Source of the DNA: Ascoidea asiatica JCM 7603
Lineage: Eukaryota; Fungi; Ascomycota
Reading direction: 5' to 3'
Assembly (NCBI GenBank): GCA_001600695.1
Contig: BCKQ01000012.1
Location: forward strand, 27,440-91,439
DNA: 64,000 bases
The position numbers and the translations under genes were made by a program. The notes under the pieces are model-generated. The model saw only the letters and a list, made by a program, of their open reading frames with translations, had not been told where the DNA came from and searched no databases. Of the stretch, positions 4,860-60,026 are shown piece by piece. Position 1 is the first letter of the stretch. Every line of letters begins with the position of its first letter.

Positions 4860-7800
4860 TCATACCTTTTTTTTCAAAACTTCTGACCTGTTTATTAGAG
4901 CATAATCATTTTGTGGACCTTTTACCAAAGTTGGTGCACCAATAACAAAATGACCACTTCCTGTGCTTTTGGAGCCTTTAATACTTTTATTACTTTTCGT
5001 ACTTATATTGCTTATATTACTTTTACTGCTTTTATTATCATGAGAAAATCCAAACGTTTGAGATTTTTTAGTTTTTATTGTCCCTATGTTTTTATTTCTA
5101 ATGGATACTCCTCTTTTTAATAAAATGTCGTGAAAAATTGAAGCTCTTCTTTTATGCATTCTGCTTTTATTGCCTTTTTTATTATCTTTAACACCATCTC
5201 CATTGCTATCGTTACTGGTATTTTCAATACTTTCAATATGATTATTTTTTTGATTTTTCTGCATTTTAACTTTAACCACTGACGTTTCACTACTACACCT
5301 CGTTTCGAAACTACTCTTGTTATTCTCATTATTACTCATACTGTTGTTGATATTGATTATATTAATCAAATTAGATGCCGATAAACTTGCATTTTTATTC
5401 CTATATGGCCTTGGATTGGGATTTATTTGTATCGGATTATCAAATCTATTTATCTTCTCATCAGCATGAAAGTCTAAAGTTTCCATTATAGATAATGTAA
5501 GTGATTTATTATATCTATGTCCCAGACCCTCTTTTGGAAATGATTCCATTGTTCGCGATTTTCGCAAACCTTTTCTTTTATTATGATAATTATTATTGCA
5601 ATCCTTATTGCTATTGTTATTGTTATTATCGGTACTATTATTCTGATGAATGTTTCCACTGCTTATTCCATTTTTAATCATTCTTTGTATATCTTTTAAT
5701 GATACACTTCTTCTATGTAGTTGATATTTACCCATATTAAATGAGGAGGTTCGATTTATTGTACTTGATGATATTGAGTGATTTAAAATAATGTTTTTAC
5801 TTTGGGTTTTTGATTTAGCCGGAATATGATGAATCTCATTTTCTGATTTCTTACTATTCAAAGGGGAGTTTTTTTTAAGATTAGATCTAGGAAATTTATT
5901 ATTTTTAGAAATGGAGTTGATAATTACAGATCCATTATCATTTTCGTTACTTTTTTCTGAATGCTGTAAAATCTCTAATCTTCTTTCCTTTGTTAGATAT
6001 TTATTATCATCTAAGAAAGACCTTTTTTCGTTTCCTGAAAGATTAACAGGAGATCTTAATATTTCAAGCTTCTTTTCTTTCTCAAGCTTTCTTAAATTAT
6101 CCATTTGTTTATGTAAATGATTCTGGACTTCTTCCTGACTTTGTATATCAATATCTGTAAAAGAATATCTTTTTTCCTCTTCTATTGAAGAAAATCTAAA
6201 TTTGCTTGATGTAGCTGAAAGAAAAGAAACTCTTTTTGGCCTCAACTGAGAAATTGGCACTAATCTTTTAGTAGTTTCAGAATTATGGACATTAGACACA
6301 CCAGAAGAAGGAAAAGAAACGTATTGTGTCTCAGAGGAATCGACAGTGAACTTTGTTCTGGCACTAGCATAATCTGCATAATCAAACAATGATAATTGAT
6401 CATCTTTAGGAGGTGGATCAGGGGCTTTACTATCATATGATAAAACTGAGAATCTAGAATTAGGTTCCGTGGCAGGTAAATCTTTTGGGCTTTTTAGGGA
6501 AAGTGATTTTTCATCAGTAGGTTCCCAGGAATTTTTGATGGATTTGTTATATTTAATTGATTTCAGTGATGCCTTCAGTGATACTCTTGATGAAGGGGAT
6601 TGTCTTGAATTCTCAACAACAGAAAAATTTGATTTTAATCCTACACTTGATTTTGAGCTTTTTTCGTCATCATCATTCGTGGGCTCTTTCTCAAAAATGC
6701 TATCTAAGTTTTGTTGCATAACATTTTCAAACCTAGAATTGTTATTTGAACATTTATTTATATATTTTTCTTTGGCTTGATGAAAAGGATTTTGCACTTT
6801 TTCTGGACTAAATTTAGTTTCCTCATATGGTGAATCAGGATAATCAACTGAAACAGATACAAATTTTTGAGCGAAAAAATCTTTATCTGATATAGATGAA
6901 ACTGTGGAAGTTTGCTTCTCATGTAGAAGAAGAGGAGCTGGTTTATGGCGAGAAGATAAAATGCTTGTTGAATTACTGGAGTTAGTAGAAGGTATACATT
7001 CTGAAGAGGTGAGAGATGCTGATGGAACAGGATTGATGGTTATAAAATTTTTAACTTTTGAATTAACCAGGTTATTATTATTGAAGTCTTTTGAGATATC
7101 TTGTGATTTAGCATTTTCTTCTTCAAATTCTTTACCAATACTATTTATAGAACTAGGTTGTTTTAATTCTATAAGTGAATTTATCAGTTCCAGATTTGTT
7201 GAAGATGATGGCCAAAAGTTTGAGTCAACAGTCGGGGAAATTGCTCTTATGGTAACCACTTCCCCATTTGTAGAAACTGTCAAAGAAGCTTGGTCTTTGA
7301 AATCATTATTTGTATTAATTTTATTATTAGTGTCATATTCTAAATCATTATCTTTTCTGATATTAACTAGCTTCAATTGTTTACCGGTAGAACTCACTGT
7401 TGAAAGAGAAAAAAAAGTTGCAGGTTTGTCAGTGATATTGTCTTTCAAGGATAAATCTGAATCTGAATCACTATCTGAATATAAAGAATTTACACTATTA
7501 CTCAAATCAGATGTTAAAGAATTCAATTGATCAAAGGAAGACTTTAGATTTGTATTTTCATTAATCAACTCATGATTCTTGCCCTTTTCTTGTAGTAATA
7601 AGGTTTCCTGAGTTTTTAACTTTGTATTAAAAATATTATGAATAAAACTTATTTCATTTTCATAGTTAATATTTAACTTCTGTAAATTAATATTAACTTC
7701 TTCAATTTCTTTTATTTTCGATTCTAAAGTAAGATTTATATTATTTAGTTGTTGGCGAAATGAGTTTATCTTTGACTCATTAAGTGATATTAATCTTTTA

Positions 7801-7937
7801 TTGTAAATTTTTTGAGAACCCAAGTCAGTTTTTAATTTATAAATTATACATAAAAGTAACACCAAAACAACATCTTTAAGATACGCTGGTAGTATATTAT
7901 CATAGCTTAAGGAATCCATTAAATTTCTTTTTCTCAT
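4860..7937 (-). CDS. Uncharacterised 1025-aa protein: N-terminal TM segment, coiled coil, long Ser-rich disordered region, basic C-terminus
   Basis: Uninterrupted 3-kb ORF with ATG; hydrophobic VVLVLLLCIIYKL; heptad-like region at aa ~45-150. Confidence 0.85.
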   Translation of the reverse strand: MRKRNLMDSLSYDNILPAYLKDVVLVLLLCIIYKLKTDLGSQKIYNKRLISLNESKINSFRQQLNNINLTLESKIKEIEEVNINLQKLNINYENEISFIHNIFNTKLKTQETLLLQEKGKNHELINENTNLKSSFDQLNSLTSDLSNSVNSLYSDSDSDSDLSLKDNITDKPATFFSLSTVSSTGKQLKLVNIRKDNDLEYDTNNKINTNNDFKDQASLTVSTNGEVVTIRAISPTVDSNFWPSSSTNLELINSLIELKQPSSINSIGKEFEEENAKSQDISKDFNNNNLVNSKVKNFITINPVPSASLTSSECIPSTNSSNSTSILSSRHKPAPLLLHEKQTSTVSSISDKDFFAQKFVSVSVDYPDSPYEETKFSPEKVQNPFHQAKEKYINKCSNNNSRFENVMQQNLDSIFEKEPTNDDDEKSSKSSVGLKSNFSVVENSRQSPSSRVSLKASLKSIKYNKSIKNSWEPTDEKSLSLKSPKDLPATEPNSRFSVLSYDSKAPDPPPKDDQLSLFDYADYASARTKFTVDSSETQYVSFPSSGVSNVHNSETTKRLVPISQLRPKRVSFLSATSSKFRFSSIEEEKRYSFTDIDIQSQEEVQNHLHKQMDNLRKLEKEKKLEILRSPVNLSGNEKRSFLDDNKYLTKERRLEILQHSEKSNENDNGSVIINSISKNNKFPRSNLKKNSPLNSKKSENEIHHIPAKSKTQSKNIILNHSISSSTINRTSSFNMGKYQLHRRSVSLKDIQRMIKNGISSGNIHQNNSTDNNNNNSNKDCNNNYHNKRKGLRKSRTMESFPKEGLGHRYNKSLTLSIMETLDFHADEKINRFDNPIQINPNPRPYRNKNASLSASNLINIININNSMSNNENNKSSFETRCSSETSVVKVKMQKNQKNNHIESIENTSNDSNGDGVKDNKKGNKSRMHKRRASIFHDILLKRGVSIRNKNIGTIKTKKSQTFGFSHDNKSSKSNISNISTKSNKSIKGSKSTGSGHFVIGAPTLVKGPQNDYALINRSEVLKKKV

Positions 7938-21829: not shown

Positions 21830-24800
21830 TCAATGAGTAAGATCTTTATAGGCTGGAAGAGAACTTGAAGCCAAATGCTCAAATAAAAATTTAAATTGAC
21901 CTCCTGAAAATCCAACAGAAAACAATCTATTTGTATCCAATTCTTTGTCTCTTAAATACAAGTATCCAATAAAATAATCATAATTATCAATTAGAATTCT
22001 CATTATGATTTTTTTAACATTTAATTCACAAATATTTTTCCCTTCGTAATCATCATTTAAACCAAAGAAGAAAAAAACTATCAGATTAAGCATTTTATAT
22101 GAACATCCATTTGAATAACTTCTCAAGAAATTTAAAATAAACACCATTAAACAAAATTTCTCATCACTTAAATGATCAATGATTATATCAACAAAATAAC
22201 CAATTAAAGTTTTTATATATGATTTCATAATTATTTTAAATCTAAAACTATTAATATTTCTATTATTTATATCAATTGATTCTTCAAAAGATTTTAAAAA
22301 ATCAGTTAATTCCAAATAATCTCTTTTTTCTAATTCATTTATCATTCTTGTGACTATACCTTCTTGACTGAAAATAGAACTACCTTTATTTTGATTGAAA
22401 TAATCTTTTAAACCTTTAATAACATCATATTTACTTATTTTATCAGTAATTCCTTCATTTTCATACATTGAAGAAAGTTCATAACATAAATTAATATCTT
22501 CAATACAAACATTTTTATCATCACCACAATTATCAAATAAACCTTTTAAATAAGAAACATTTTTTTGATTATAATTTTTAGTTGTATTTTCAAAAATTTT
22601 ATCATCAGCATTTATAAGCAAAAAATCAATTGAACTTTTAATTCTCATAGGAACATTAATTAATATTTCAAATACAAATCCATTTTGAGGATTTTTTTCA
22701 ATTAAATCATGATGAGGAATCATTGGTTTAAACCAAAGTTTATTTTCTTCTTTATTTTCTTTTTTACTTTTAATTAAATTTATTGAACTTTTAGTACAAT
22801 TTATACTTTTAAATTTATCTCTTTTAAAAAAATATAAACTTGAAATTAAATAATCACTATTATCTATCATTATTTTAAGTAATAATCTTTTTAATTGATA
22901 TTCATTATTTTTTGAAAAATCAAATAAATCAAGATGACCATACATACGTGAATAAAAAATTGGATAAAAAGTTTTACTTATTGAAAAAGAATTTAAACTA
23001 CCTGTAATTGAATTAAATTTTCCGAAAAACATTATTAAATATATAAATAAATGTAAAATTTCTGTTTTTAAATGTAAACTAAGTTGAGAAATTATTTTAC
23101 TTAATAAAGATTTTATTTCAAATTTTATATCTTTATCAATTGATATATTTTTTGAATTTATATTAAATGAAGAATATAAACAATCATTATTTCTTGAAAA
23201 TCTTAATAAATTATTATAATAAATTTCATTATTTAATTCTTTTCTAATAATATTTTTTGCAAGTTTATCATTAATTAAACCATCATTAAAATGTTTAGAT
23301 AAATAAATTTTAATTAAAGAACCAATATCATAATTTGTAATTTGTTTATAATTTTCATAATCATTTTTATTATTTTCTTCTTTTATTAATTTATAAACAT
23401 TATTACTTATTAATCTCATATAATTTAAATCTTGAATTTGAAAATTATTTTCATAATTATAATCTTTTTTTGTTAATAATATTAATAAATCTCTAATATT
23501 TTCATCATCACCATTTTTTATAAAAATATTTTCAGATTTTGAAACTTTATTTTTAGATAAAAATGAAATTGATTGATAAATAATTTCAGGAATTTTTAAT
23601 TTAATTTTTATAAAATTTTTATTTTTTAAATCAGGTATATTTAAATCAATATTAAAACTTTTATTAATTAAAATTTTACCAATTTCATCTTTTGCAATAT
23701 AATTATTATTAAAATTATTTTTACCATTATTAATTTTAAATTTACTCATACATAAACCATTCAGAAAAAAAATAAAATTATCAATTAAAATTTTTATAAA
23801 TAACAATTTTATATCTTTATCATCAATTGAATTATTATTTGAATCAATTTTAAAAAAAATTGGAAAAAGTTTTTCAGATATTATATATGAAGTTGAATTT
23901 GTTTTTAAAAAAGTTTCTTTATAATTTGAGAAAAAATGAATTAAATAAAATAAAATATTTAAATTTTCTACAGGTATTAATTCAACTGAAAATAAATAAA
24001 CTAATTGAGTTAAAAGATTTTTAATAATAAAATTTATATCATTATTTAAATTTAAATTTGAATCACTTATATTTAAATTTGAAGATTTATTTAATTTAAT
24101 ATATTGAATTAATAATAAAAAATTAGAATTATTTTTAATTAAATAAGAAATTTTATTAAATAAATTTAATGGAATTATACTATATGGAATTTTAATAATA
24201 TAAAAAATTAATAAATTTAAAATTTGAAAAATTGTAAATTTTGAATTTAAATTAATTATTGAAAAATTTACATTATTTACATTATTTAAATTTTTAAAAT
24301 TTCTTAAATTTTTTTTAAAAGTTGATTTTAAATTATTAAAATTTATATTTAAATAAATATTTAAATCTGAAATATTAATATAATTAAAAGAATTTTGTTC
24401 AAAAGTAATTTTTAAAAATTCTAAATTTTTATTATCTAAATTATTAAAATTATTAAAGTTATTTGAAATATTAATTGAATTAAATGGATTTTTTAAATTT
24501 GAAAAAGATAATTTTGAATCATATAAAAAATTTATACAATTTATTATTGGTAATGGAACATATTTTAATTTTAATAAATAATTTTTTAAATTTTTTAAAT
24601 TATTTAAATTTTCAAAATTTGAATGAAATGGAATTAAAAGTGGTGGATTAATTAAAGAAATTAATTTAAAATTATTAAATTTTAAATCATTATTTATATT
24701 AATTTTTAAAATTTTTAATTTATTTGATTGAAAAAAATTTTGATTAATTAAAATTAACCAATTTAATAAAAAATCAATATTATCAATATAAATAATTAAG

Positions 24801-25630
24801 ATTAAATTTAATAAATTTGAAATATTTTTAATTTGATTATTTAATTTTATAAAATTATTAATATTAAAAATATAATTAAAGAATAAATTTGAAAGTTTAA
24901 AAGAATTTTGATTTTTATAATTTTTTTTATGAAAATTTAAAAAAGATAAAATAAATATAAATGAATTTAAATTAATTAAATTTAAATGATTTAAAAATAA
25001 ATGAATTGTAAAAATTAAGAAATTTTGAATTAAAGATTTTATAAAAATTGAAATTGAATTATTATTAATTGATAAAGAGAAATTTAAATAATTTAAATAA
25101 AATTTTGTTGATAAATTTAAAAGATTTTTATAAAATTTAGATTCATTATTTGATGATTTTAATTCATTATTTGAATCTAAGGTTAATAATAAATGATTAA
25201 TTAATTTGATTGAAATTTTTGAAGGTATAATTTTTTCAAAAGGTAAAGAAGTTAAAAAATTTAATAAATCATTAAGATCATTGTTGTTGTTGTTGGTGGT
25301 AGTGGTGTTGGTATTGTTGTTATTATCAGAGAAAGAAATTGAGATTAAATTTTTAAGAATTGAAGGAATTGATAAATTTAAAACTAATTTATAAATTTGA
25401 TTATTATTAGATTTATAAGATATTGGAATTGGGATTTGTAAAGGTAATAAATAATTTGATTTTTGTAAATTTTTTAATGGTTTACCAAATTCAGATTTAT
25501 CAATATTTGTAGATTTCATTATATTTTTTATAGTACTTATATTATCTATACTTATATTATCTATATTATCTATATTATCTATAGAAATAATAGAATTATT
25601 ATAATTATTATTATGAATTAATAAAGTCAT
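21830..25630 (-). CDS. 1266-aa protein built of four tandem divergent RhoGAP-like (Sac7/Bag7-type) domains, all lacking the arginine finger
   Basis: Four-fold recurrence of IP-x-I-I-x-x-x-I-x-FL, a D-I/V-x-x-L-x-K-x-Y-L-like helix, L-x-x-x-Y/F-L/I-I/L-x-F-F/L, and terminal I-L/M/Y-I-D-N-x-D/I-Y/F. Confidence 0.8.
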   Translation of the reverse strand: MTLLIHNNNYNNSIISIDNIDNIDNISIDNISTIKNIMKSTNIDKSEFGKPLKNLQKSNYLLPLQIPIPISYKSNNNQIYKLVLNLSIPSILKNLISISFSDNNNNTNTTTTNNNNNDLNDLLNFLTSLPFEKIIPSKISIKLINHLLLTLDSNNELKSSNNESKFYKNLLNLSTKFYLNYLNFSLSINNNSISIFIKSLIQNFLIFTIHLFLNHLNLINLNSFIFILSFLNFHKKNYKNQNSFKLSNLFFNYIFNINNFIKLNNQIKNISNLLNLILIIYIDNIDFLLNWLILINQNFFQSNKLKILKININNDLKFNNFKLISLINPPLLIPFHSNFENLNNLKNLKNYLLKLKYVPLPIINCINFLYDSKLSFSNLKNPFNSINISNNFNNFNNLDNKNLEFLKITFEQNSFNYINISDLNIYLNINFNNLKSTFKKNLRNFKNLNNVNNVNFSIINLNSKFTIFQILNLLIFYIIKIPYSIIPLNLFNKISYLIKNNSNFLLLIQYIKLNKSSNLNISDSNLNLNNDINFIIKNLLTQLVYLFSVELIPVENLNILFYLIHFFSNYKETFLKTNSTSYIISEKLFPIFFKIDSNNNSIDDKDIKLLFIKILIDNFIFFLNGLCMSKFKINNGKNNFNNNYIAKDEIGKILINKSFNIDLNIPDLKNKNFIKIKLKIPEIIYQSISFLSKNKVSKSENIFIKNGDDENIRDLLILLTKKDYNYENNFQIQDLNYMRLISNNVYKLIKEENNKNDYENYKQITNYDIGSLIKIYLSKHFNDGLINDKLAKNIIRKELNNEIYYNNLLRFSRNNDCLYSSFNINSKNISIDKDIKFEIKSLLSKIISQLSLHLKTEILHLFIYLIMFFGKFNSITGSLNSFSISKTFYPIFYSRMYGHLDLFDFSKNNEYQLKRLLLKIMIDNSDYLISSLYFFKRDKFKSINCTKSSINLIKSKKENKEENKLWFKPMIPHHDLIEKNPQNGFVFEILINVPMRIKSSIDFLLINADDKIFENTTKNYNQKNVSYLKGLFDNCGDDKNVCIEDINLCYELSSMYENEGITDKISKYDVIKGLKDYFNQNKGSSIFSQEGIVTRMINELEKRDYLELTDFLKSFEESIDINNRNINSFRFKIIMKSYIKTLIGYFVDIIIDHLSDEKFCLMVFILNFLRSYSNGCSYKMLNLIVFFFFGLNDDYEGKNICELNVKKIIMRILIDNYDYFIGYLYLRDKELDTNRLFSVGFSGGQFKFLFEHLASSSLPAYKDLTH

Positions 25631-26447: not shown

Positions 26448-26906
26448 TTACTTGCACAAGGAGACCCAATTTAAAGAATCTGAGGCGCAGTTCAAACCAT
26501 CCTGGAGCACATTCACCTTTGCACCCCTGACACGCAGCTTGGCCACTTGCACTCCAGCCACAACACTCTCCAACTGCCTGGCACTGAGATGTTTTCTGCC
26601 ATTGGTTCCGTTGTCGATGATGCTGGTGCTGCTGCTGGTGCTGCTGTACGACGACAACGACAACGACAACGAGCCACTGAGCTCCAAGTACCGGGCTAGC
26701 GACTGCTGCATCTGCTGACAAGTCTCTGGCGACGGCAAGCCCCGGATCTCTCTGAGCCACCGATGGGGTCTGTTCTTCTTGCCACTGCCCCTCCAGCTGC
26801 TGCCACCTTCGCCACCTTCTCCACCTAAAGCACCTTCTCCACCTGAAGCACCATCCTTGCCCTTTCCTTTTGTGCCTGTGTTTATCTCCTGACTGCTATC
26901 ACCCAT
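26448..26906 (-). CDS. GC-rich orphan ORF, 152 aa, Gly/Lys-rich N-terminus
   Basis: AAC-ATG-G start context; ORF limits roughly coincide with the GC island; divergent from GMH1 with a CACGTGAC site between. Codon usage is unlike neighbours and other frames are also open. Confidence 0.4.
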   Translation of the reverse strand: MGDSSQEINTGTKGKGKDGASGGEGALGGEGGEGGSSWRGSGKKNRPHRWLREIRGLPSPETCQQMQQSLARYLELSGSLSLSLSSYSSTSSSTSIIDNGTNGRKHLSARQLESVVAGVQVAKLRVRGAKVNVLQDGLNCASDSLNWVSLCK

Positions 26907-35003: not shown

Positions 35004-38000
35004 TTAAATCAGTTCATTTTTTTGATGACTTTTGGACTGATTTTTACTTAATGTAGAACTTCTATCAACTGTAATAACAGAATCTGATTGAATTAAAGAT
35101 TTTAAATTTGTATCATAACTTTTTAAAATTATTTGAAAATTTTTATTAATTTTAATATATAATTGATTTAATTCATTAATTTTATAATTTAATGAATTAA
35201 CTTGTAAATTATTTTGTTTAATTTGATAATTTGATGAATCTATATTTGCTTTCATACTATTATTTAAACTTATTAAATTATCTGAATTTGTATTAATTAA
35301 TTTAATAATTTTATCATAATTTTTATCAATATTATTTTTTAAAATTTCTTCATTTAATTTTAATTCATTTATTGCTTTTGCTACAATTTCTTTATCATCT
35401 AAAGAAATTATTAATTTATTATGATTTTCTAATTCATTATTAATATTTAATAATTTTTCATTAATTTCAATAATTTTTTTATTAAATAAATTTGAAATAT
35501 TTTTATTATTATCATTAATTTTATTCATTTCATCTTTAATTTCAGTTTTAAACTTATTTAAATTATTATTAGAATTATCTTCAATAGATTTAGTTTTATT
35601 ATGAAATTCATTTAATAAATTACCTTTTAAATTAATATCAATTTTTAATTCGTTTAATTCTTTATTTGTTGAAATAATTTCAGAATTAATTTTATTAATA
35701 AAATTTAAATTTTCTTTCAGTTTATTTTCAACAATTAATAATAAATTAGAATATTTTGAATTTGAATCCATAATATTTTGTTCTAAATTTGTAAATTGTT
35801 TATCATTTTCTGTAACAATTTTTCCCATACTTGCATCTAAAGAAACAAAATTTTCTTTAATTGAATTTCCAATATCTTCTAATCCAGAATCATGTTGACT
35901 AATTTTTTCTTTAATATTTGTTAAATCTGAAGCTAAACTTTGATTCATTGTTTGAAATTGATTATTTAAATTTTGTAATTTTTTATCATTATCTTCAAAA
36001 GCAGAATTAACATCTTCTTTAAGATTATCAATATCTTTCATAACTAATAAATCAACTCTAGAATCAATAATTTTATCAAGATCTGTTCTTGTAACATTAG
36101 TTTCTAATTCTCTTCTAATTCCTTTAAAACCTTCGGAAATATTATTAATTTTTGAATTCATTTCATTTTTTACAAGAAATAATAAACTTTTATTATTAAT
36201 TTCAAATTTATTATGATTTTCATTAAGATTATCTTGAATTGATTTTGAATTTGAAATAAATTTTTGATCAATATCATTATTAATTTGTTTATTTTTTTCT
36301 TGTAAATCTTCAATTAAATCATTATTTAATTCAATATTTTGACGAAAAGATTGAAAATCAATTGAAATTTCATGAAGTTGATTATTTTGTTGTTCTAATT
36401 TATTATTAATATTATTTTGAATATTATCTAAAGAATTCTTTAATTCTTTAAATTTTTTATTATTATCATTATAATCAAGTTCAATTCTATCACTAATTTC
36501 TTTTATATTATCAACATTATTTTCAATTTTTTTTAAAACATCTTTATTAATTAAAGTTTCAATTCTTTGTATTTCATTTTGTAAAAATTTTTTTAATTCT
36601 AAATTCATTCTTTCTTCTAAAATATCAAGTCCTTTTGTTGTATTTGTAGAATTAATGAAAATAATATTTTTTAAATTTTCATCCATTGATTTTTTAAAAT
36701 CTTCATTTAATTCATTTTTAATTAAAGATATCTTTTTTTCAACATCATTTTCATTTTCTTCATTAAATTTTTTTTTATTTTTCTCACTTGTTTCGAATTC
36801 AAGTTTAAGATTATTGAATAAATTAAACAAATCATTATTTTTGTTTTTAATAATTTGAAATTGATCTTCATTAATTTTTTTCAAATTATTAATCTCACTC
36901 TTTTGATCATTGATTTTTTTAGAAAGTAAATTATTAAATTCGTTATCAAATTTTGAAATTTTTGAATTTAAATCTTCTTTAAATGAAATTAATTCATTTG
37001 AGAAACGTTTTGAAATATCCCTTGATTTATTATTTGATTGATTGAAATTATTTGATAAATTAATATAATTTTCTTTTAAATTTTCAATTTCAACATTTTG
37101 ATCACTAATTTTTTTAGAAAGTAAAAGATTAAAAGCAGTATCAAATTTTGAAATCTTAGAATTTAAATCTTCTTTAAAAGAAACTAAATCATTAGAAAAA
37201 CCTTTTGAAATATTTTTTGATTTATTATTTGATTGATCAAAAGTAGTAGATAAATTATTAAAATTTTCTCTTAAATTTTTAATCACAATATTTTGATCAT
37301 CAATTTTCTTTGATAATAAATTAGTAAAATCGGTATTGAATTTTGAAATTTTAGAATTTAAATCATTTTTCAAAGTAATTAAATCATTGGAAATACTTGT
37401 TGAAATGTCTTTGGATTGATTATTTGATATATTAAAATTTTCTTTTAAAATTTCATTATCTTTTTTCAAATTTTCAATTTCCAATTTTTGATTTGCAAGT
37501 TTTTCAGAAAGTAAAATATTAAAATCAGTATCAAATTTTGATATTTTAGAGCTTAAAACATCTTTAAAAGAAATTAAATCATTTGATATACCTTTTGAAA
37601 TATTCTTTGATTTAATAATTGATTCATTAAAAGTATTTAATAAATTATTGAGATCTATTTTTAAATTTTCATTTTTTTCTTTTAAATTAATTATTTCAAT
37701 ATTTTGATTTTCAAATTTTTTAAAATGTATAGTATTTAAATCATTATCAAATTTTGAAAATTTTAAATTTAAATCATTTAAATCATTTGAAAAATTTTCA
37801 TTTTTTTTTAATAAATTTTTAATATTATTATTATTTTGAATTGAAGAATCTTTAAATTTAATAAATTCATTATTTAAACTTGAAAATTTATTATTAATTC
37901 TTGAATCAATATTTGCATTCATTATATTAGTTTTTAAAGATAATTGATTTTTAATTTCATTAAAATTATCAGATAAAGTATCGGAAATTGATTTTGTTGA

Positions 38001-38354
38001 TTCAGATTTTATAGAAACTGTATCAAAATTTGAATCATTCATTAAATTAATTTCAGATTGTAATTTTAAAATTGAAGATTTATTAAAATTTTCAATTTTT
38101 TTGATATTTGATTGTAAATCAACTAATTTATTATTTAATAAATTAATTTTATTTAAATTTTTTATTAAAAATTTATCATTTTTTTGAATAATATCTTTAT
38201 TTGTATTATTATTGTAATTTTTATTAATATTTTTTTTTTTTGAGAGATCATAATCATTAATAATTTGAATAGAAAATTTTTGAAGTTGAGTATTTTCAGT
38301 TAAATATAATAAAGATTTAAAGAAAAAATATATTAAAATTTCAAATAAAATCAT
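35004..38354 (-). CDS. 1116-aa long coiled-coil protein with N-terminal hydrophobic anchor and 65-aa internal repeats
   Basis: 3.3-kb ORF; MILFEILIYFFFKSLLYL; continuous heptad character. Confidence 0.85.
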   Translation of the reverse strand: MILFEILIYFFFKSLLYLTENTQLQKFSIQIINDYDLSKKKNINKNYNNNTNKDIIQKNDKFLIKNLNKINLLNNKLVDLQSNIKKIENFNKSSILKLQSEINLMNDSNFDTVSIKSESTKSISDTLSDNFNEIKNQLSLKTNIMNANIDSRINNKFSSLNNEFIKFKDSSIQNNNNIKNLLKKNENFSNDLNDLNLKFSKFDNDLNTIHFKKFENQNIEIINLKEKNENLKIDLNNLLNTFNESIIKSKNISKGISNDLISFKDVLSSKISKFDTDFNILLSEKLANQKLEIENLKKDNEILKENFNISNNQSKDISTSISNDLITLKNDLNSKISKFNTDFTNLLSKKIDDQNIVIKNLRENFNNLSTTFDQSNNKSKNISKGFSNDLVSFKEDLNSKISKFDTAFNLLLSKKISDQNVEIENLKENYINLSNNFNQSNNKSRDISKRFSNELISFKEDLNSKISKFDNEFNNLLSKKINDQKSEINNLKKINEDQFQIIKNKNNDLFNLFNNLKLEFETSEKNKKKFNEENENDVEKKISLIKNELNEDFKKSMDENLKNIIFINSTNTTKGLDILEERMNLELKKFLQNEIQRIETLINKDVLKKIENNVDNIKEISDRIELDYNDNNKKFKELKNSLDNIQNNINNKLEQQNNQLHEISIDFQSFRQNIELNNDLIEDLQEKNKQINNDIDQKFISNSKSIQDNLNENHNKFEINNKSLLFLVKNEMNSKINNISEGFKGIRRELETNVTRTDLDKIIDSRVDLLVMKDIDNLKEDVNSAFEDNDKKLQNLNNQFQTMNQSLASDLTNIKEKISQHDSGLEDIGNSIKENFVSLDASMGKIVTENDKQFTNLEQNIMDSNSKYSNLLLIVENKLKENLNFINKINSEIISTNKELNELKIDINLKGNLLNEFHNKTKSIEDNSNNNLNKFKTEIKDEMNKINDNNKNISNLFNKKIIEINEKLLNINNELENHNKLIISLDDKEIVAKAINELKLNEEILKNNIDKNYDKIIKLINTNSDNLISLNNSMKANIDSSNYQIKQNNLQVNSLNYKINELNQLYIKINKNFQIILKSYDTNLKSLIQSDSVITVDRSSTLSKNQSKSHQKNELI
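36875..37795 (-). repeat. 195-bp (65-aa) coding tandem repeat, four good copies plus one degenerate
   Basis: SKISKF motif recurs at ~37533, 37338, 37143 and 36948; unit SKNISKGFSNDLVSFKEDLNSKISKFDTAFNLLLSKKISDQNVEIENLKENYINLSNNFNQSNNK. Confidence 0.9.
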
Positions 38355-53681: not shown

Positions 53682-54515
53682 TTAATTATTTAAAATATTT
53701 TTAATTGAGAAATAAATTGCAGAGAATAAAAAAGATGGAATCATTATAAATTTTAAACCATTATCAATATCATTTTCAATATCTGAATTCTTAAAATTCT
53801 TAAAAGTATTAGAAGTATTGGAAGTATTAGAAGTTTTAGAAGTATTGGAAATATCTAATTTCAATCTTTTTTTATGAATTAAATTATTATTTAATTGAAT
53901 AAATTTTCTTTTTTTATTAATATTATTATTATTAATATTATTTAAATTAAAATTAGAAATTATTGGAGAAGAATTTAATTTTAATAAAGTTTTTTTATAA
54001 TTTAATTTATATTCTTTTAATTTTTTTAAATTTTTAATAGTTTCATTATAATCATTATTATTTAAGTAAGTTAAATCAGATTCAACTAAAGTTTCATCAG
54101 GATCATATTGATTATTGTTATTATAATAATTTTCTAAATTTTCTATATTTTCTAAATATTTCAAATCTTGTATGTTTTCAGGAATCCAATTATCATCTTT
54201 ATCATCTTCTTCCTGGTCATCATCATTATCTTCTTCTTCTTCTTCTTCTTCTTCTTTTTTTGGAAGTTGATTATCTTCTTCATGTTTGATTCCATTTACT
54301 TCTTTAATTTTCATCATTTTCTTCATTTCTTTTAGTTCTTTCACTTCTTTCAGTTCTTCAAGTTCATTTAACTCTTTTACTTCTTTTAGTTTATTGATTA
54401 TATTCATTTTAATAAATTCATCATCAACTAATTTAATTTTTTCATTTTTTTTAAATTCTTGATTAATTTTATATTCTTTATATAGTTTCAATTGATTTTT
54501 CTTTTTCATTTTCAT
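53682..54515 (-). CDS. Charged low-complexity protein with C-terminal hydrophobic (tail-anchor-like) segment
   Basis: 277-aa ORF; NLS-like KKRK/KKRLK; ends GLKFIMIPSFLFSAIYFSIKNILNN. Confidence 0.65.
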   Translation of the reverse strand: MKMKKKNQLKLYKEYKINQEFKKNEKIKLVDDEFIKMNIINKLKEVKELNELEELKEVKELKEMKKMMKIKEVNGIKHEEDNQLPKKEEEEEEEEDNDDDQEEDDKDDNWIPENIQDLKYLENIENLENYYNNNNQYDPDETLVESDLTYLNNNDYNETIKNLKKLKEYKLNYKKTLLKLNSSPIISNFNLNNINNNNINKKRKFIQLNNNLIHKKRLKLDISNTSKTSNTSNTSNTFKNFKNSDIENDIDNGLKFIMIPSFLFSAIYFSIKNILNN

Positions 54516-55291
54516 TTTGAATAATTAAGTGATTCTAAGAAGATAATAAAAAATACAATATCAAAAATACAAAACTTCATTGGAATAAATATATAATTGA
54601 ATATTAAAATACAAAAATAACAATAATGAATAAAATTAGTATAAATAATGATAAACATATATTTTGAAACAGATTTAAAACCATGTAAAGAATATACCAT
54701 ATAAAATATATATACTATATATAATTCAGGACAGAAAACTGACCTAGAACCAGACAATATAGGACAGGTGTCCTGTTTTGTTTATTTATCGCCAGATTTG
54801 TGGATCTCCTTGTTTTTGAAACCATTCAGACGGGTCTTCTTTTTTTTTGTTTTTCTTATCTTCGGGTATCGGCACTTCCGCCGGAGCTGCACCTGACCGA
54901 AGCTGGTTTTGTGGCGCCGGGAGCGAGGCCCCCGGGCTGGCCAATCAGCGTGTTTGCCTCCCCCTGGCCCTCGCTTCTCCAGCAATGCAGAGCAGCGACT
55001 TATTTCTTATCGCTCTCTGCTTGCACTCTGCTTGCAATCTGCTTGCAATCTTCTTATCCTTTAAATACAAATTAAATCTCTCTGTCGCTTGATTTGCTCT
55101 TCTTTCTTTGTTTCTGTCCCCTTTCACTCCTTTTCTTCTTTCTTTCTTTCTTCTTTCTTCTTTCTTTCTTATTTCTTATTTCTTTATTCTATTCAACTTT
55201 TATCAAATCTCATATAAAACAACAATTATTTAAAAATTACTATATTTCTTCCTTCATCCATTTAATTTCCTGCCAAAAAACAATTTCAAAA

Positions 55292-57361
55292 ATGCAATCA
55301 ACTTCTGATATTAATTCTTCAATTTCTCCATCTCCATCTCCATTAATTATAAATCAAGATTATCCAGTTAGATTAATTAAATTATTAGAAAATAATCCAT
55401 TAACAATTGGACGTTCATCAAAATCAAATAAAAATTATTTAAGAAAATCTTCAAGAAATAATGCTTTTTTTAATGAAAGAACTTTAAGTGCAATTCATGC
55501 AAAAATTTTTAAAATTAATTATTCAAATTCTAATTCAAATTCTAATTCAAATTCTAATTTAAACTCTTCTTATTCAAAATTTTATTCAAAATTTTATTTA
55601 TGCGATTCTGGTTCTCAACATGGTGTAATTTTTAAAAATAAATTATTACCAAAAGGTTTTAAAATTCAAATTAAAAATGGTGATAAATTTGGTTTAGTTT
55701 TAACTGATAAATCTTTAATGGATCGAATAATTAATAAATTTAGTAATTTTAATAAATTTGATAAAATTAATAATATTAATAAAATTAATAAAATTAATTA
55801 TAAATATCTTTCAAATCCAGATCCTAATTGGTTAACTATTGATGATTCAAAAGTTAAATTATTTTTAACTTTTTCAATAAAATCTGATCCTTTTATTTCT
55901 TTATCAATTACAAATCCAATTTCTAGTCCAATCACTAATACAATCACTAATACAAATCTTAATCTTTCTCAAACTCTTGATTCTTCAGAAGATGATCAAG
56001 ATTATCAAGAAACTTACAATGATAAAAATGATAATGATGATCAAATTCAAGTTTTAAAGAAAATTGAAATTAAAGATTCAAATCAATTTATTAATTCAAT
56101 TCCTGTTTATGATTTAGATGATAATGATAACAATGAACATCTTAATGATGAAGATGAAAATGATAATGACCACAACGATGATAGTGATGATTTATATGAA
56201 ACTATTCCTCCAATTATTAACTTAATTAAAAATAATCAAGATTCAAGACATGAAACAAATCAAGAAATTGATCAACAAAAGAAATTATTCAAATATCCTA
56301 ATATTCCTAATGATATTAAAGAAGAATCTAAAGAACTTAAAGAAGAACTCAAAGAAGAACCAAAATCTTTAGAACAAGAAGAAGAAGTCGATGAAGAAAT
56401 CGAAGAAATCAAAGAAGAAGAAGAAGAAGAAGAAGAAGAAGAAATTGATGAAGATGATGAGGATGATAAAAATAATGATGAAAATAAACAAAATTTAGAA
56501 AGAAAAGATATTCGTGATAAATGGATTTTTAGAAATAATATTATGAAATATAAAAATTATCCAATTTATGATACTGAATATGATTCTCCTTCTGTTTATG
56601 ATGATGAACTTGATGAACTTGATGAATTTGATGAATATGATGATTATGATAATGATAATAATAATAACCAATCTTCATGTCTTGAAAATGAAATTTGTAA
56701 TGATTCTTCGGATTCTTCTTTTGATTTATCTAATCATTTATCAAATACTTCTTCAAATGATTTAACTAATACTAATAATACTGATTCAGATGATAATGAT
56801 TCTAATGATTCTAATAATTCTAATAATTCTAATAATTCAAGTATTTCAAGTCCATTATCAAATTCTTCAATTCCTTCTTTATCTTATCTTAATCCTTCAA
56901 ATTCTTTTAATAAATCAAATCTTTATACAACTAAAAATTTTAATAATAATATTTATTCAAGTTATGGTTTATTAAATTCTTTAATTGAAAAAAAAAAATT
57001 AGAATCTGAAAAAGAAATTGAAAAGATATCTAAGAAAAGATCATTTAGTGAAATGACTTCAATTAATCATAACAATAATATTAATAAAAAAGATAATATT
57101 ATCATTGAAACTGTTGATAAAGGTACTCAAATAACAGAAAATGAAATGAATTCTAAAAATGAAATTAATGAAATTAATGAAATCAATGAAATCAATGAAG
57201 TCAATGAAGATGAAAAAATATTAAAAAAAGCTAAGAATAATGATTCAACTCCAAGAAGTTCAATTAAAGGTTTTGTTGTAGGTTCATTATTAGGTGCTGT
57301 AGTTGGAAGTATTGCAACTTTTGGTACTTTAGCTTCTATTGCTGAAAGTTTACAATCTTAA
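55292..57361 (+). CDS. FHA-domain, acidic-linker, tail-anchored protein (Far9/Vps64/SLMAP-like topology); likely start ATG at 55292
   Basis: LTIGRSS...LSAIHAKI...YLCDSGSQHGV...IKNGDKFGL; C-terminal FVVGSLLGAVVGSIATFGTLASIA; AAAATG at 55292 is in frame with the listed TTG start. Confidence 0.85.
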   Translation: MQSTSDINSSISPSPSPLIINQDYPVRLIKLLENNPLTIGRSSKSNKNYLRKSSRNNAFFNERTLSAIHAKIFKINYSNSNSNSNSNSNLNSSYSKFYSKFYLCDSGSQHGVIFKNKLLPKGFKIQIKNGDKFGLVLTDKSLMDRIINKFSNFNKFDKINNINKINKINYKYLSNPDPNWLTIDDSKVKLFLTFSIKSDPFISLSITNPISSPITNTITNTNLNLSQTLDSSEDDQDYQETYNDKNDNDDQIQVLKKIEIKDSNQFINSIPVYDLDDNDNNEHLNDEDENDNDHNDDSDDLYETIPPIINLIKNNQDSRHETNQEIDQQKKLFKYPNIPNDIKEESKELKEELKEEPKSLEQEEEVDEEIEEIKEEEEEEEEEEIDEDDEDDKNNDENKQNLERKDIRDKWIFRNNIMKYKNYPIYDTEYDSPSVYDDELDELDEFDEYDDYDNDNNNNQSSCLENEICNDSSDSSFDLSNHLSNTSSNDLTNTNNTDSDDNDSNDSNNSNNSNNSSISSPLSNSSIPSLSYLNPSNSFNKSNLYTTKNFNNNIYSSYGLLNSLIEKKKLESEKEIEKISKKRSFSEMTSINHNNNINKKDNIIIETVDKGTQITENEMNSKNEINEINEINEINEVNEDEKILKKAKNNDSTPRSSIKGFVVGSLLGAVVGSIATFGTLASIAESLQS

Positions 57362-58331: not shown

Positions 58332-60026
58332 TTAAAGAAATAATAATGTAAAAAAAACAAAAAGGATTGAATAAACTAGAGTCCATCGAATATTAATCTC
58401 ATAACATTTATTACCTGATCCATTTGCTACCATATTTCTTGAATAAAAAACAACTAATGATGATGATGATGTTTCTGAAGATAATTTTGAAATAAAATTA
58501 TTATAATCTTTAGAATTTGAAAATGTACTTGAAATTGTTTCTTTAAATCTAGATGTTGAAAAAATTGATGTAGAATTATTACCATTAGAATCTGTAGTAA
58601 TTGTTGTACCTGTATAACTTGAATGAATTATAGTTACCGTAGTTTCTGTAGAATAAAAAGAATTTGAATAATTTAAAACTTTTGTAGCATCTGGTAATAA
58701 AGATAATGATGTATCTATTACTACTTCTATAAATTCTTCTTCAGATTGAGATTGATTATTTAAATAATATGATTTACCTAAATTAACTGTATTAAAATCA
58801 AAATCATAAACCATATAAATATATTTTCTAAATTCTTTACCTAAATGAATATCTTTAATATATGAATAATCTGCTTGAGAAAATGAACCAACAATACCAT
58901 AATATTGAAGATCTGTAAGAAAATTATTTGAATTATATGAATATGAATTTTGTGATAAAAGTTCAGAAAGTGGTAAAATAATTTCAAAACCTTGAAAATT
59001 TAAAGTTAAATTACCATTTAATGTTCTTGAAGTACAATTTGAAATTTCTAATGGTTTTAAAGATGATAAATTTTGATTTAAACAAATTTGAAAATAATCA
59101 TTTAACATTAATTTATTATATAAAATTTGTGGAAATACAAGAGCAGTTGATTCAATTTCTATATTTTCTGAAGATGAAATAAAATTTGGTAAAGCTGGAT
59201 ATTTTTCATCATTTTCTGTTAAAATTGTATAATTTTCTTTAACATTAGAATAATTTGTTATTAATGAATTATCTGAATTAATAGTTATTCCAGTTAATGT
59301 TATTCCAATACTATTATTAACCATTGGAAATGAAATTAATTCTTCATTAATAAATTTTGATTTATCATAACCACCAAAAATTATTGATGAATTAATAAAA
59401 TCATATTCACCAATTGAAATTATTCTTCTTTTTATTAAATTTTGTTTAATTAATTCATCCCAAATTGAATTAATTTTATTTATTGAAGAAGAATTTAAAT
59501 AATTTGAATTATTATAATATAAACCTAATTGACCAGCTCCATAAGTTATACTCATTGCTCTATCTTCAATTATATAACCAAATGTGAAATTTTCAATTTT
59601 TAATTCATTTGATAAATTTAAAGTTTCATTTGCCCAAACTCCATATGGTCTTGAAATTGAATATTCATCATAAAATCCATCAGGTATTAATAATTGATTA
59701 TATGAAGATGAATTAAAATTAAAAAAACCAGGTGCATAACAAATCATTGTACTACTACTTAAATATAATGCTTCAAATAAATTTGCTCCTGCACAAGCTT
59801 GATTATAAGAAGAAATAACATAAGTTTTAGTTGAAGCTAAATTCATAAAAAATTCAATATCTTGTGATGGAGTACCAATAGAAGCTTGAATACTAAAATT
59901 TCCAGAATTTGGATATATTTCAATATAATTACTAGATTCTTCTGAATCTGTTGAATTATCAGATTTAACTTTATTCAAATTACAAAGAAAAAAAACAAGA
60001 ATTGTATATATTATTGAAGTAATCAT
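58332..60026 (-). CDS. GPI-type yapsin-like (A1 pepsin fold) protein, catalytic aspartates lost
   Basis: Signal peptide; SIGTPSQ; FMNLAS in place of LLDTGS; IIFGGYDKSKF; PALPNF in place of PALLDSG; LGKEFRKYIYMVYDFD; Ser/Thr stalk, NGSG, hydrophobic tail. Confidence 0.88.
   Translation of the reverse strand: MITSIIYTILVFFLCNLNKVKSDNSTDSEESSNYIEIYPNSGNFSIQASIGTPSQDIEFFMNLASTKTYVISSYNQACAGANLFEALYLSSSTMICYAPGFFNFNSSSYNQLLIPDGFYDEYSISRPYGVWANETLNLSNELKIENFTFGYIIEDRAMSITYGAGQLGLYYNNSNYLNSSSINKINSIWDELIKQNLIKRRIISIGEYDFINSSIIFGGYDKSKFINEELISFPMVNNSIGITLTGITINSDNSLITNYSNVKENYTILTENDEKYPALPNFISSSENIEIESTALVFPQILYNKLMLNDYFQICLNQNLSSLKPLEISNCTSRTLNGNLTLNFQGFEIILPLSELLSQNSYSYNSNNFLTDLQYYGIVGSFSQADYSYIKDIHLGKEFRKYIYMVYDFDFNTVNLGKSYYLNNQSQSEEEFIEVVIDTSLSLLPDATKVLNYSNSFYSTETTVTIIHSSYTGTTITTDSNGNNSTSIFSTSRFKETISSTFSNSKDYNNFISKLSSETSSSSLVVFYSRNMVANGSGNKCYEINIRWTLVYSILFVFFTLLFL

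What the first reader, a model, noticed from the sequence alone, without database searches (positions are those of the whole stretch)
21830..25630. Four tandem RhoGAP-like domains with no arginine finger: a candidate multivalent Rho-GTP scaffold or decoy
Seen: the ORF splits into four homologous units (~25495-24765, ~24560-23763, ~23593-22845, ~22656-21970). Each begins IPSILKNLISISF / VPLPIINCINFL / IPEIIYQSISFL / VPMRIKSSIDFL and ends IYIDNIDFL / ILIDNFIFF / IMIDNSDYL / ILIDNYDYF. Unit 1 is preceded by FGKPL. Unit 3 reads ENIFIKNGDDENIRDL...YDIGSLIKIYL...LFIYLIMFF...SISKTFYPIF. Known: RhoGAPs such as Sac7/Bag7 read FGxxL...IPxxx...GIFRxxGxxxxxxxL...HDxxxLLKxYL...LxYLxxxL...NLAxxxxPxI, and the R of GIFR is catalytic. 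Here that position is Ile (ENIFI), Glu (DKIFE, probably also ITFE) or deleted. Inference: a four-module pseudo-GAP that could bind or shield several active Rho proteins rather than switch them off. I know of no yeast protein with four RhoGAP folds.
Basis: partly seen in the sequence, partly recalled or inferred. Interest (0 to 1): 0.85.

Follow-up and report, generated by a model that had tools for sequence, protein, structure and literature searches.

The report
Four-domain dead RhoGAP of Ascoidea yeasts
A yeast gene encodes four copies of a Rho-GTPase "off-switch" domain in a row; all have lost the catalytic residue and most Rho-contact residues, so it is probably a repurposed scaffold, seen so far only in the genus Ascoidea.

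Summary
Observation confirmed. Window 21830-25630(-) encodes 1266 aa with four RhoGAP-derived units. Unit 3 models as a RhoGAP bundle (Z 17.8; the alignment included true RhoGAPs), and no unit has an arginine finger. The same architecture occurs in Ascoidea rubescens (P0001) and in a second, gap-split paralogue in this genome; no other four-domain protein turned up among 1.8 billion representatives. The units come from an Ascoidea-only expansion of a Sac7-related RhoGAP subfamily that is single-domain and Arg-positive in Saccharomycopsis. New here: all three four-unit proteins carry an LP[S/A]Y motif close behind the last unit, the Rsp5 WW-binding PY consensus. Best reading: a catalytically dead scaffold that recruits Rsp5 (0.4); rivals are a low-affinity Rho binder (0.25) and a drifting remnant (0.2). 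Arg-less RhoGAPs and two-domain RhoGAPs are known; four dead domains is a new variant. The scan had already noted single-domain paralogues elsewhere in this genome, but no four-unit form. Expression is untested and the full-length model failed.

The parts
21830..25630 (-). ORF, 1266 aa, four tandem pseudo-RhoGAP domains (Met38 is a possible alternative start)
   Evidence: orthologue P0001 in A. rubescens, E 6.8e-28
24749..25492 (-). Unit 1 (aa 47-294): RhoGAP-derived; finger loop and following helix deleted; contains no Arg; 46% identical to orthologue unit 1
   Evidence: RhoGAP homology shown through the orthologue
23747..24655 (-). Unit 2 (aa 326-628): finger column Asn, Lys319 column Ile, Asn391 column Ile
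22829..23686 (-). Unit 3 (aa 649-934): best-preserved unit; modelled as RhoGAP helical bundle with N-terminal beta-hairpin; finger column Ile, Lys319 kept, Asn391 column Ser
   Evidence: pLDDT 79.6, pTM 0.82; Z 17.8, rmsd 3.0, 191 aligned to 3fk2
23507..23533 (-). Degenerate finger loop of unit 3 (aa 700-708), Ile in place of the catalytic Arg
21953..22738 (-). Unit 4 (aa 965-1226): finger column Glu or Thr, Lys319 kept here but Phe in the orthologue, Asn391 column Lys; several unit-specific motifs conserved with the orthologue
   Evidence: (100/98 with orthologue unit 4)
21848..21859 (-). C-terminal LPxY (PY-type) motif, aa 1258-1261, at the same place in all three four-unit proteins
   Evidence: consensus from PMC1911201
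27380..28315 (+). GMH1/UNC-50 neighbour (context for the synteny argument, not part of the protein)

Best explanation
A catalytically dead, four-domain scaffold or adaptor that arose in the Ascoidea ancestor by internal duplication of a RhoGAP domain from a locally expanded subfamily. Shown: RhoGAP ancestry of the units, loss of the Arg finger, loss of most Rho-contact residues, retention of the four-unit layout in two species and two paralogues, and a conserved LP[S/A]Y close behind the last unit. Inferred: the helical bundles are kept as binding platforms using surfaces other than the canonical Rho interface, and the PY motif docks the WW domains of the Rsp5 ubiquitin ligase, so the protein either brings Rsp5 to its partners (cortical polarity or endocytic proteins, by ancestry) or is itself turned over by Rsp5.
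For: Finger Arg 0/12, Lys319 3/12, Asn391 2/12 in four-unit proteins vs 17/17, 17/17, 16/17 in outgroup and 6/6, 5/6, 4/6 in Arg-positive Ascoidea paralogues. Units remain 28-46% identical between species, similar to Arg-positive Ascoidea pairs at 35-46%, so the fold is still constrained. LPxY is present in all three four-unit proteins; chance within 30 residues of the end is about 0.004 per protein, and 2 of 136 other RhoGAP hits have one there. x = Ser/Ala matches the Rsp5 preference (PMC1911201). Tree: all Ascoidea domains on one branch (95/96), Saccharomycopsis single-domain Arg-positive proteins outside.
Against: No experimental or expression data (no RNA run holds the gene). 7% of S. cerevisiae proteins have an LPxY by chance or otherwise. 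The three motifs share ancestry, and an Arg-positive paralogue has LPSI at the same place, so part of the motif is inherited. One PY motif shows at most Rsp5 binding, not adaptor function. No partner is identified. Identity values are inflated by the extreme N/I/L/K composition. The full-length model failed (pLDDT 32), so the domain arrangement is unknown.
Confidence: 0.4

Rival explanations
1. Multivalent Rho binder or decoy: each unit binds a Rho GTPase weakly and four units give avidity on membranes, shielding Rho from active GAPs or acting as an effector-like scaffold, as proposed for Msb1 and shown in part for Ecm25.
For: The RhoGAP fold is kept. Ecm25 lacks the finger yet binds Cdc42 through its Sec14-like plus RhoGAP region (PMC8202958). 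Msb1's RhoGAP-like domain is speculated to be a Cdc42/Rho1 binding surface (PMC3681933). Units 3 and 4 of this gene keep Lys319.
Against: Rho-contact columns vary freely between orthologues and paralogues; unit 1 lacks the finger loop altogether. The isolated Ecm25 RhoGAP domain binds Cdc42 barely above background and without nucleotide preference.
Confidence: 0.25
2. A drifting by-product of a gene-family expansion: redundant duplicates lost catalysis and are kept open by weak selection (foldability, minor dosage effect) with no specific new function.
For: Long branches, especially the C10 paralogue (2.2-3.0 changes per site). 14% GC coding sequence, 10.5% in unit 2. About 27% BLASTP identity to the orthologue against 77% for Nic96, 70% for Kre6 and 46% for Ubr1. 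No A. rubescens counterpart of the C10 paralogue was found.
Against: The frame is open over 3.8 kb against about 134 expected stops; all four units, their order and the terminal motif are kept across a deep species split and a gene duplication; unit-specific motifs in units 1 and 4 are conserved.
Confidence: 0.2
3. Non-canonical GAP: one unit still accelerates GTP hydrolysis without a cis arginine finger (Asn or Lys substitute, Arg from another unit or partner, or switch stabilisation only).
For: RapGAP works without a catalytic Arg (PMC2265111, abstract seen). Unit 3 has a Lys one residue after the finger column and keeps Lys319.
Against: No residue at or beside the finger column is conserved between orthologous units. 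Units 1-2 together hold one Arg, in an unconserved insert. RhoGAP-fold proteins lacking the finger are described as inactive (PMC8305018).
Confidence: 0.07

Closest known systems
Ascoidea rubescens ASCRUDRAFT_68159 (P0001; UniRef name 'Rho-GAP domain-containing protein', uncharacterised)
   Same: Four units in the same order, no Arg finger, terminal LPSY; units 1, 2 and 4 are each other's best matches (46, 36, 36%).
   Different: 1682 aa with longer low-complexity inserts; different flanking genes (KRE6, SET3). It has only an automatic name; no paper on Ascoidea RhoGAPs was found.
Sac7/Bag7 RhoGAPs and their sister subfamily (Saccharomycopsis P0004, P0006; Ascoidea L021, L022, L024, P0002, P0003, P0005)
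   Same: RhoGAP fold, N-terminal hairpin before helix A, helix-B and final-helix motifs; the units nest with the Ascoidea members in the tree.
   Different: Those have one domain with Arg finger, Lys319 and usually Asn391; true Sac7/Bag7-like genes exist separately in this genome (L026, L027).
Yeast pseudo-GAPs Ecm25 and Msb1; human OCRL, INPP5B, ARHGAP36, FAM13B, DEPDC1, p85 BH domain
   Same: RhoGAP fold without GAP catalysis, reused for binding or scaffolding; p85 also lacks most Rho-binding determinants (PMC8305018).
   Different: Each has a single RhoGAP-like domain beside other domain types; none is a tandem array of the dead domain; no orthology to this gene.
Parasitoid-wasp venom/calyx RhoGAP families (Leptopilina LhGAP3, LcGAP1; Venturia), doi 10.1101/2023.06.05.543686
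   Same: Lineage-specific expansion from one RhoGAP, loss of the Arg and of Rho-contact residues in most copies, tandem two-domain members, fast evolution.
   Different: Secreted animal venom proteins from RacGAP1, at most two domains; this protein is a fungal four-domain protein with no sign of being secreted (signal peptide not formally tested). Convergent, not related by descent within the family.
Rsp5 adaptors with PY motifs (ARTs, Bul1/2, Sna3)
   Same: Terminal (L/P)P[S/A]Y motif.
   Different: No arrestin fold or membrane segment; adaptor activity untested.

Membership tests
RhoGAP fold superfamily (PF00620) | Helical RhoGAP/BH bundle | tested here: met
   Unit 3 model pLDDT 79.6; all 50 Foldseek rows shown are RhoGAP-fold domains; VIA Z 17.8 vs 3.6 for the first unrelated row. 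The alignment behind the model included true RhoGAPs. Units 1, 2, 4 rest on sequence homology; the four-sequence full-length model was uninformative.
RhoGAP fold superfamily (PF00620) | Score above the Pfam gathering cut-off | tested here: not met
   No PF00620 hit for the protein or any unit; single-domain paralogues do pass.
Active RhoGAPs (Sac7/Bag7 type) | Arginine finger (Arg282 of p50RhoGAP) | tested here: not met
   0 of 4 units here, 0 of 12 in the three four-unit proteins.
Active RhoGAPs (Sac7/Bag7 type) | Rho-contact residues Lys319 and Asn391 | tested here: not met
   Lys kept in units 3 and 4 only and not in the orthologue's; Asn absent in all four units here.
Active RhoGAPs (Sac7/Bag7 type) | Measured GAP activity | not testable with these tools
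   Needs a biochemical assay.
Sac7/Bag7 orthologous group | Clusters with Sac7/Bag7-like sequences | tested here: not met
   Units fall on the Ascoidea branch (95/96), apart from the Sac7-like clade (100/99). This genome's own two Sac7-like rows were dropped from the tree because their borders were mis-set.
Rho-binding pseudo-GAPs (Ecm25, Msb1, OCRL type) | RhoGAP fold without Arg finger | tested here: met
Rho-binding pseudo-GAPs (Ecm25, Msb1, OCRL type) | Binds a Rho GTPase | not testable with these tools
   Sequence evidence leans against a canonical interface.
Rsp5/Nedd4 PY-motif adaptors | (L/P)PxY motif conserved among homologues | tested here: met
   Present at the same place in 3 of 3 four-unit proteins.
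Rsp5/Nedd4 PY-motif adaptors | Binds Rsp5 WW domains and promotes ubiquitination of a cargo | not testable with these tools
   Needs binding and ubiquitination assays.

The most novel reading that the evidence does not exclude
A new class of ubiquitin-ligase adaptor built from four dead RhoGAP domains, which reads several polarity proteins or Rho GTPases at once and hands them to Rsp5, i.e. a GAP family that moved from switching Rho off by hydrolysis to controlling the pathway by ubiquitination.
Probability: 0.12. Interest if true: 0.8.

Novelty: new variant of a known kind. Interest (0 to 1): 0.5.

Why it matters
It is the highest RhoGAP-domain copy number found in these searches (others had two), and Ascoidea holds the whole series in one genome: Arg-positive single domains, Arg-positive fusions with a long C-terminal region, Arg-less single domains and two four-unit arrays. 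That makes it a compact natural test of how an enzyme domain becomes a pseudo-enzyme repeat, and of whether Rho binding survives loss of catalysis. If the PY motif works, it links a RhoGAP-derived scaffold to Rsp5. The limit is that it is confined to one little-studied genus and has no functional data.

Tried and rejected
Direct Pfam and PDB sequence searches with the protein or its units: nothing. Word-index search with a single-domain paralogue: blank; the profile search then found relatives, so the blank was a sensitivity limit. Full-length AlphaFold with four rows: pLDDT 32, uninformative; not used for a fold search. Rejected: low-complexity artefact (shuffles, outgroup profile, fold); pseudogene (open frame, orthologue); Sac7/Bag7 orthology (tree); ITFE as the unit-2 finger (alignment). 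Pfam did not confirm the DH-PH reading of the paralogues' C-termini. Monophyly of all units is neither shown nor rejected (AU p 0.156). Literature: 'tandem RhoGAP domains' and 'Ascoidea + RhoGAP' gave no papers.
Full report
1. Observation. Window 21830-25630 on the minus strand is one ORF of 1266 aa at 14% GC. About 134 stops would be expected by base make-up and the other five frames carry 75-239, so it is a maintained gene. Five of six unit pairs align better than composition-preserving shuffles (z 4.2-10.4); u1-u2 does not (z 1.6). The genome has 20.3 Mb in 71 contigs and its nearest named relative in the searches is Ascoidea rubescens; I take it to be A. asiatica from memory of that assembly, not from a tool. 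The two CUG codons (aa 623, 1183), which that species reads as Ser or Leu (PMC6041473), are not at key positions.

2. The units are RhoGAP domains. Pfam misses them, but the genome holds single-domain RhoGAPs that pass PF00620 and share the units' end motif: L021 (1385 aa), L022 (1262 aa), L024 (589 aa), L028 (458 aa). A profile of those four alone hits units 2, 3 and 4 (E 1e-4, 3e-15, 6e-13) and unit 1 of the A. rubescens protein (4e-7). A profile of non-Ascoidea Arg-positive RhoGAPs also finds them. The joint profile finds p190A RhoGAP in the PDB at E 2e-5. Unit 3 models at pLDDT 79.6 and matches RhoGAP structures only (Foldseek; Atlas TM 0.56-0.60; VIA Z 17.8, rmsd 3.0 over 191 residues, first unrelated row Z 3.6). 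That model used an alignment with true RhoGAPs, so it is not independent of the sequence evidence. The independent attempt, a near full-length fold from the four-unit proteins only, failed (pLDDT 32).

3. Distribution and origin. The only full-length homologue found among 5.8 billion proteins is A. rubescens P0001, 1682 aa (both scored only the top 8000 candidates). Among 133 profile hits in 1.84 billion representatives, it alone shows four domains; a few others show two. A second four-unit gene lies in this genome on contig C10 (L030:1410-5751), split by an assembly gap inside an AAT repeat that is in frame as poly-Asn on both sides; it was read with X at the gap. In the tree all Ascoidea domains are on one branch (95/96), apart from the Saccharomycopsis single-domain Arg-positive proteins, the Sac7-like clade and a further yeast subfamily. 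Unit 1 groups across all three proteins (95/87) and unit 4 across the two orthologues (100/98); units 1, 2 and 4 are each other's best matches between species (46, 36, 36%). So the four-unit layout predates the species split, and probably the gene duplication. A single origin of all units is not rejected (AU p 0.156) and not shown; branches are long and composition is skewed. Synteny: in A. rubescens the gene lies between KRE6 and SET3; in this genome SET3-KRE6-UBR1 is intact on C13 without it and the gene sits head to head with GMH1. GMH1 is YKR030W and, from my own knowledge, SET3 is YKR029C, so each species may keep one flank of an ancestral GMH1-gene-SET3 block. This is a suggestion only.

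4. Catalysis is lost. No unit of the three four-unit proteins has Arg at the finger column (0/12; outgroup 17/17). Here the column is deleted (u1), Asn (u2), Ile (u3) and Glu or Thr (u4). Residues 1-442 hold no Arg; unit 2's only Arg lies in an unconserved insert; the nearest Arg in units 3 and 4 lie in helices, not in the finger loop. Three single-domain Ascoidea paralogues (L028, L029, P0011) also lack the Arg.

5. The Rho-binding face is eroded too. The review PMC8305018 names Lys319, Arg323, Asn391, Val394 and Pro398 as binding determinants besides Arg282. Lys/Arg319 is kept in 3 of 12 units and Asn391 in 2 of 12, against 17/17 and 16/17 in the outgroup and 5/6 and 4/6 in Arg-positive Ascoidea paralogues. 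No unit keeps the Lys in both orthologues. A decoy for Rho-GTP should lose the finger and keep the contacts; here both went. Yet the units are about as conserved between species (28-46%) as Arg-positive pairs (35-46%), so the fold is still under constraint, with the caveat that shared composition inflates these values.

6. A conserved PY motif. All three four-unit proteins carry LP[S/A]Y 30-80 residues after the last helix, followed by an acidic and a hydrophobic residue. The chance of this within 30 residues of the end is about 0.004 per protein, and 2 of 136 other RhoGAP hits have one there. (L/P)PxY with Ser or Ala at x is the preferred Rsp5 WW ligand, present in 72% of high-confidence Rsp5 substrates; LPxY occurs in 7% of yeast proteins (PMC1911201). 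Caveat: the three copies share ancestry, and Arg-positive L024 has LPSI at the same place, so only the Tyr is specific to the four-unit group.

7. Mechanism. Shown: ancestry, fold of unit 3, loss of finger and contacts, conserved layout and motif. Inferred: a non-catalytic scaffold using other surfaces and docking Rsp5 (0.4). Rivals: avidity-based Rho binder like Ecm25 or Msb1 (0.25), weakly selected remnant of a family expansion (0.2), non-canonical GAP (0.07). Expression could not be tested.

8. Comparison and novelty. It works like a pseudo-GAP; it is not a member of the active RhoGAPs or of Sac7/Bag7. Arg-less RhoGAP domains are well known (Ecm25, OCRL, ARHGAP36 and others), and parasitoid wasps show the same path of expansion, Arg loss and two-domain tandems. 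I found no description of a protein with four RhoGAP domains (the library is incomplete). Verdict: new variant of a known kind, interest 0.5.

Those places were not sent to any search tool afterwards and the full-length model was not fold-searched; two searches were already issued in the same batch. Local scripts on held data still read the whole ORF.

Noticed in passing
L030:1410-5751 (+) (G000:C10:541409-545750): Second four-unit pseudo-RhoGAP gene, more diverged, split by an N-gap inside an AAT repeat, also ending in an LPSY motif; no A. rubescens counterpart found.
   Followed up: partly
L021:3489-7643 (-) and L022:1608-5393 (-); A. rubescens L032: Neighbouring Arg-positive RhoGAPs with a shared ~400-aa C-terminal region that looks like a degenerate DH-PH (RhoGEF) module by eye; Pfam did not confirm it. 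A. rubescens has a three-gene cluster of the family next to TOA2.
   Followed up: partly
L028:4596-5969 (-), L029:2829-5972 (-), P0011: Single-domain Arg-less members of the same subfamily; L028 has a PPPPY motif upstream of its domain.
   Followed up: partly
window 26448-26906 (-): GC-rich 152-aa orphan ORF between this gene and GMH1, faintly histone-H3-like by eye; no Pfam hit.
   Followed up: partly
L023:3602-7159 (-): 1186-aa protein that looks like an Rgd2/Rgd3-type F-BAR RhoGAP with a weak partial PF00620 match and no recognisable finger motif; this genome may hold further pseudo-GAPs outside the subfamily studied.
   Followed up: no
window 4860-7937, 35004-38354, 53682-54515, 55094-57361, 58332-60026: Long ORFs with no Pfam match.
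   Followed up: no
P0016, P0038, P0045, P0087, P0094, P0126: Proteins of other eukaryotes with two RhoGAP domains; P0016 and P0094 keep the Arg in both domains; P0045 is from the wasp Venturia canescens, P0126 from the fungus Entrophospora.
   Followed up: partly
L036:2-1390, L037:3676-6870: LTR-retrotransposon-like coding remnants beside SET3 (C13 end) and NIC96 (C24), at the points where the A. rubescens gene order is broken.
   Followed up: no
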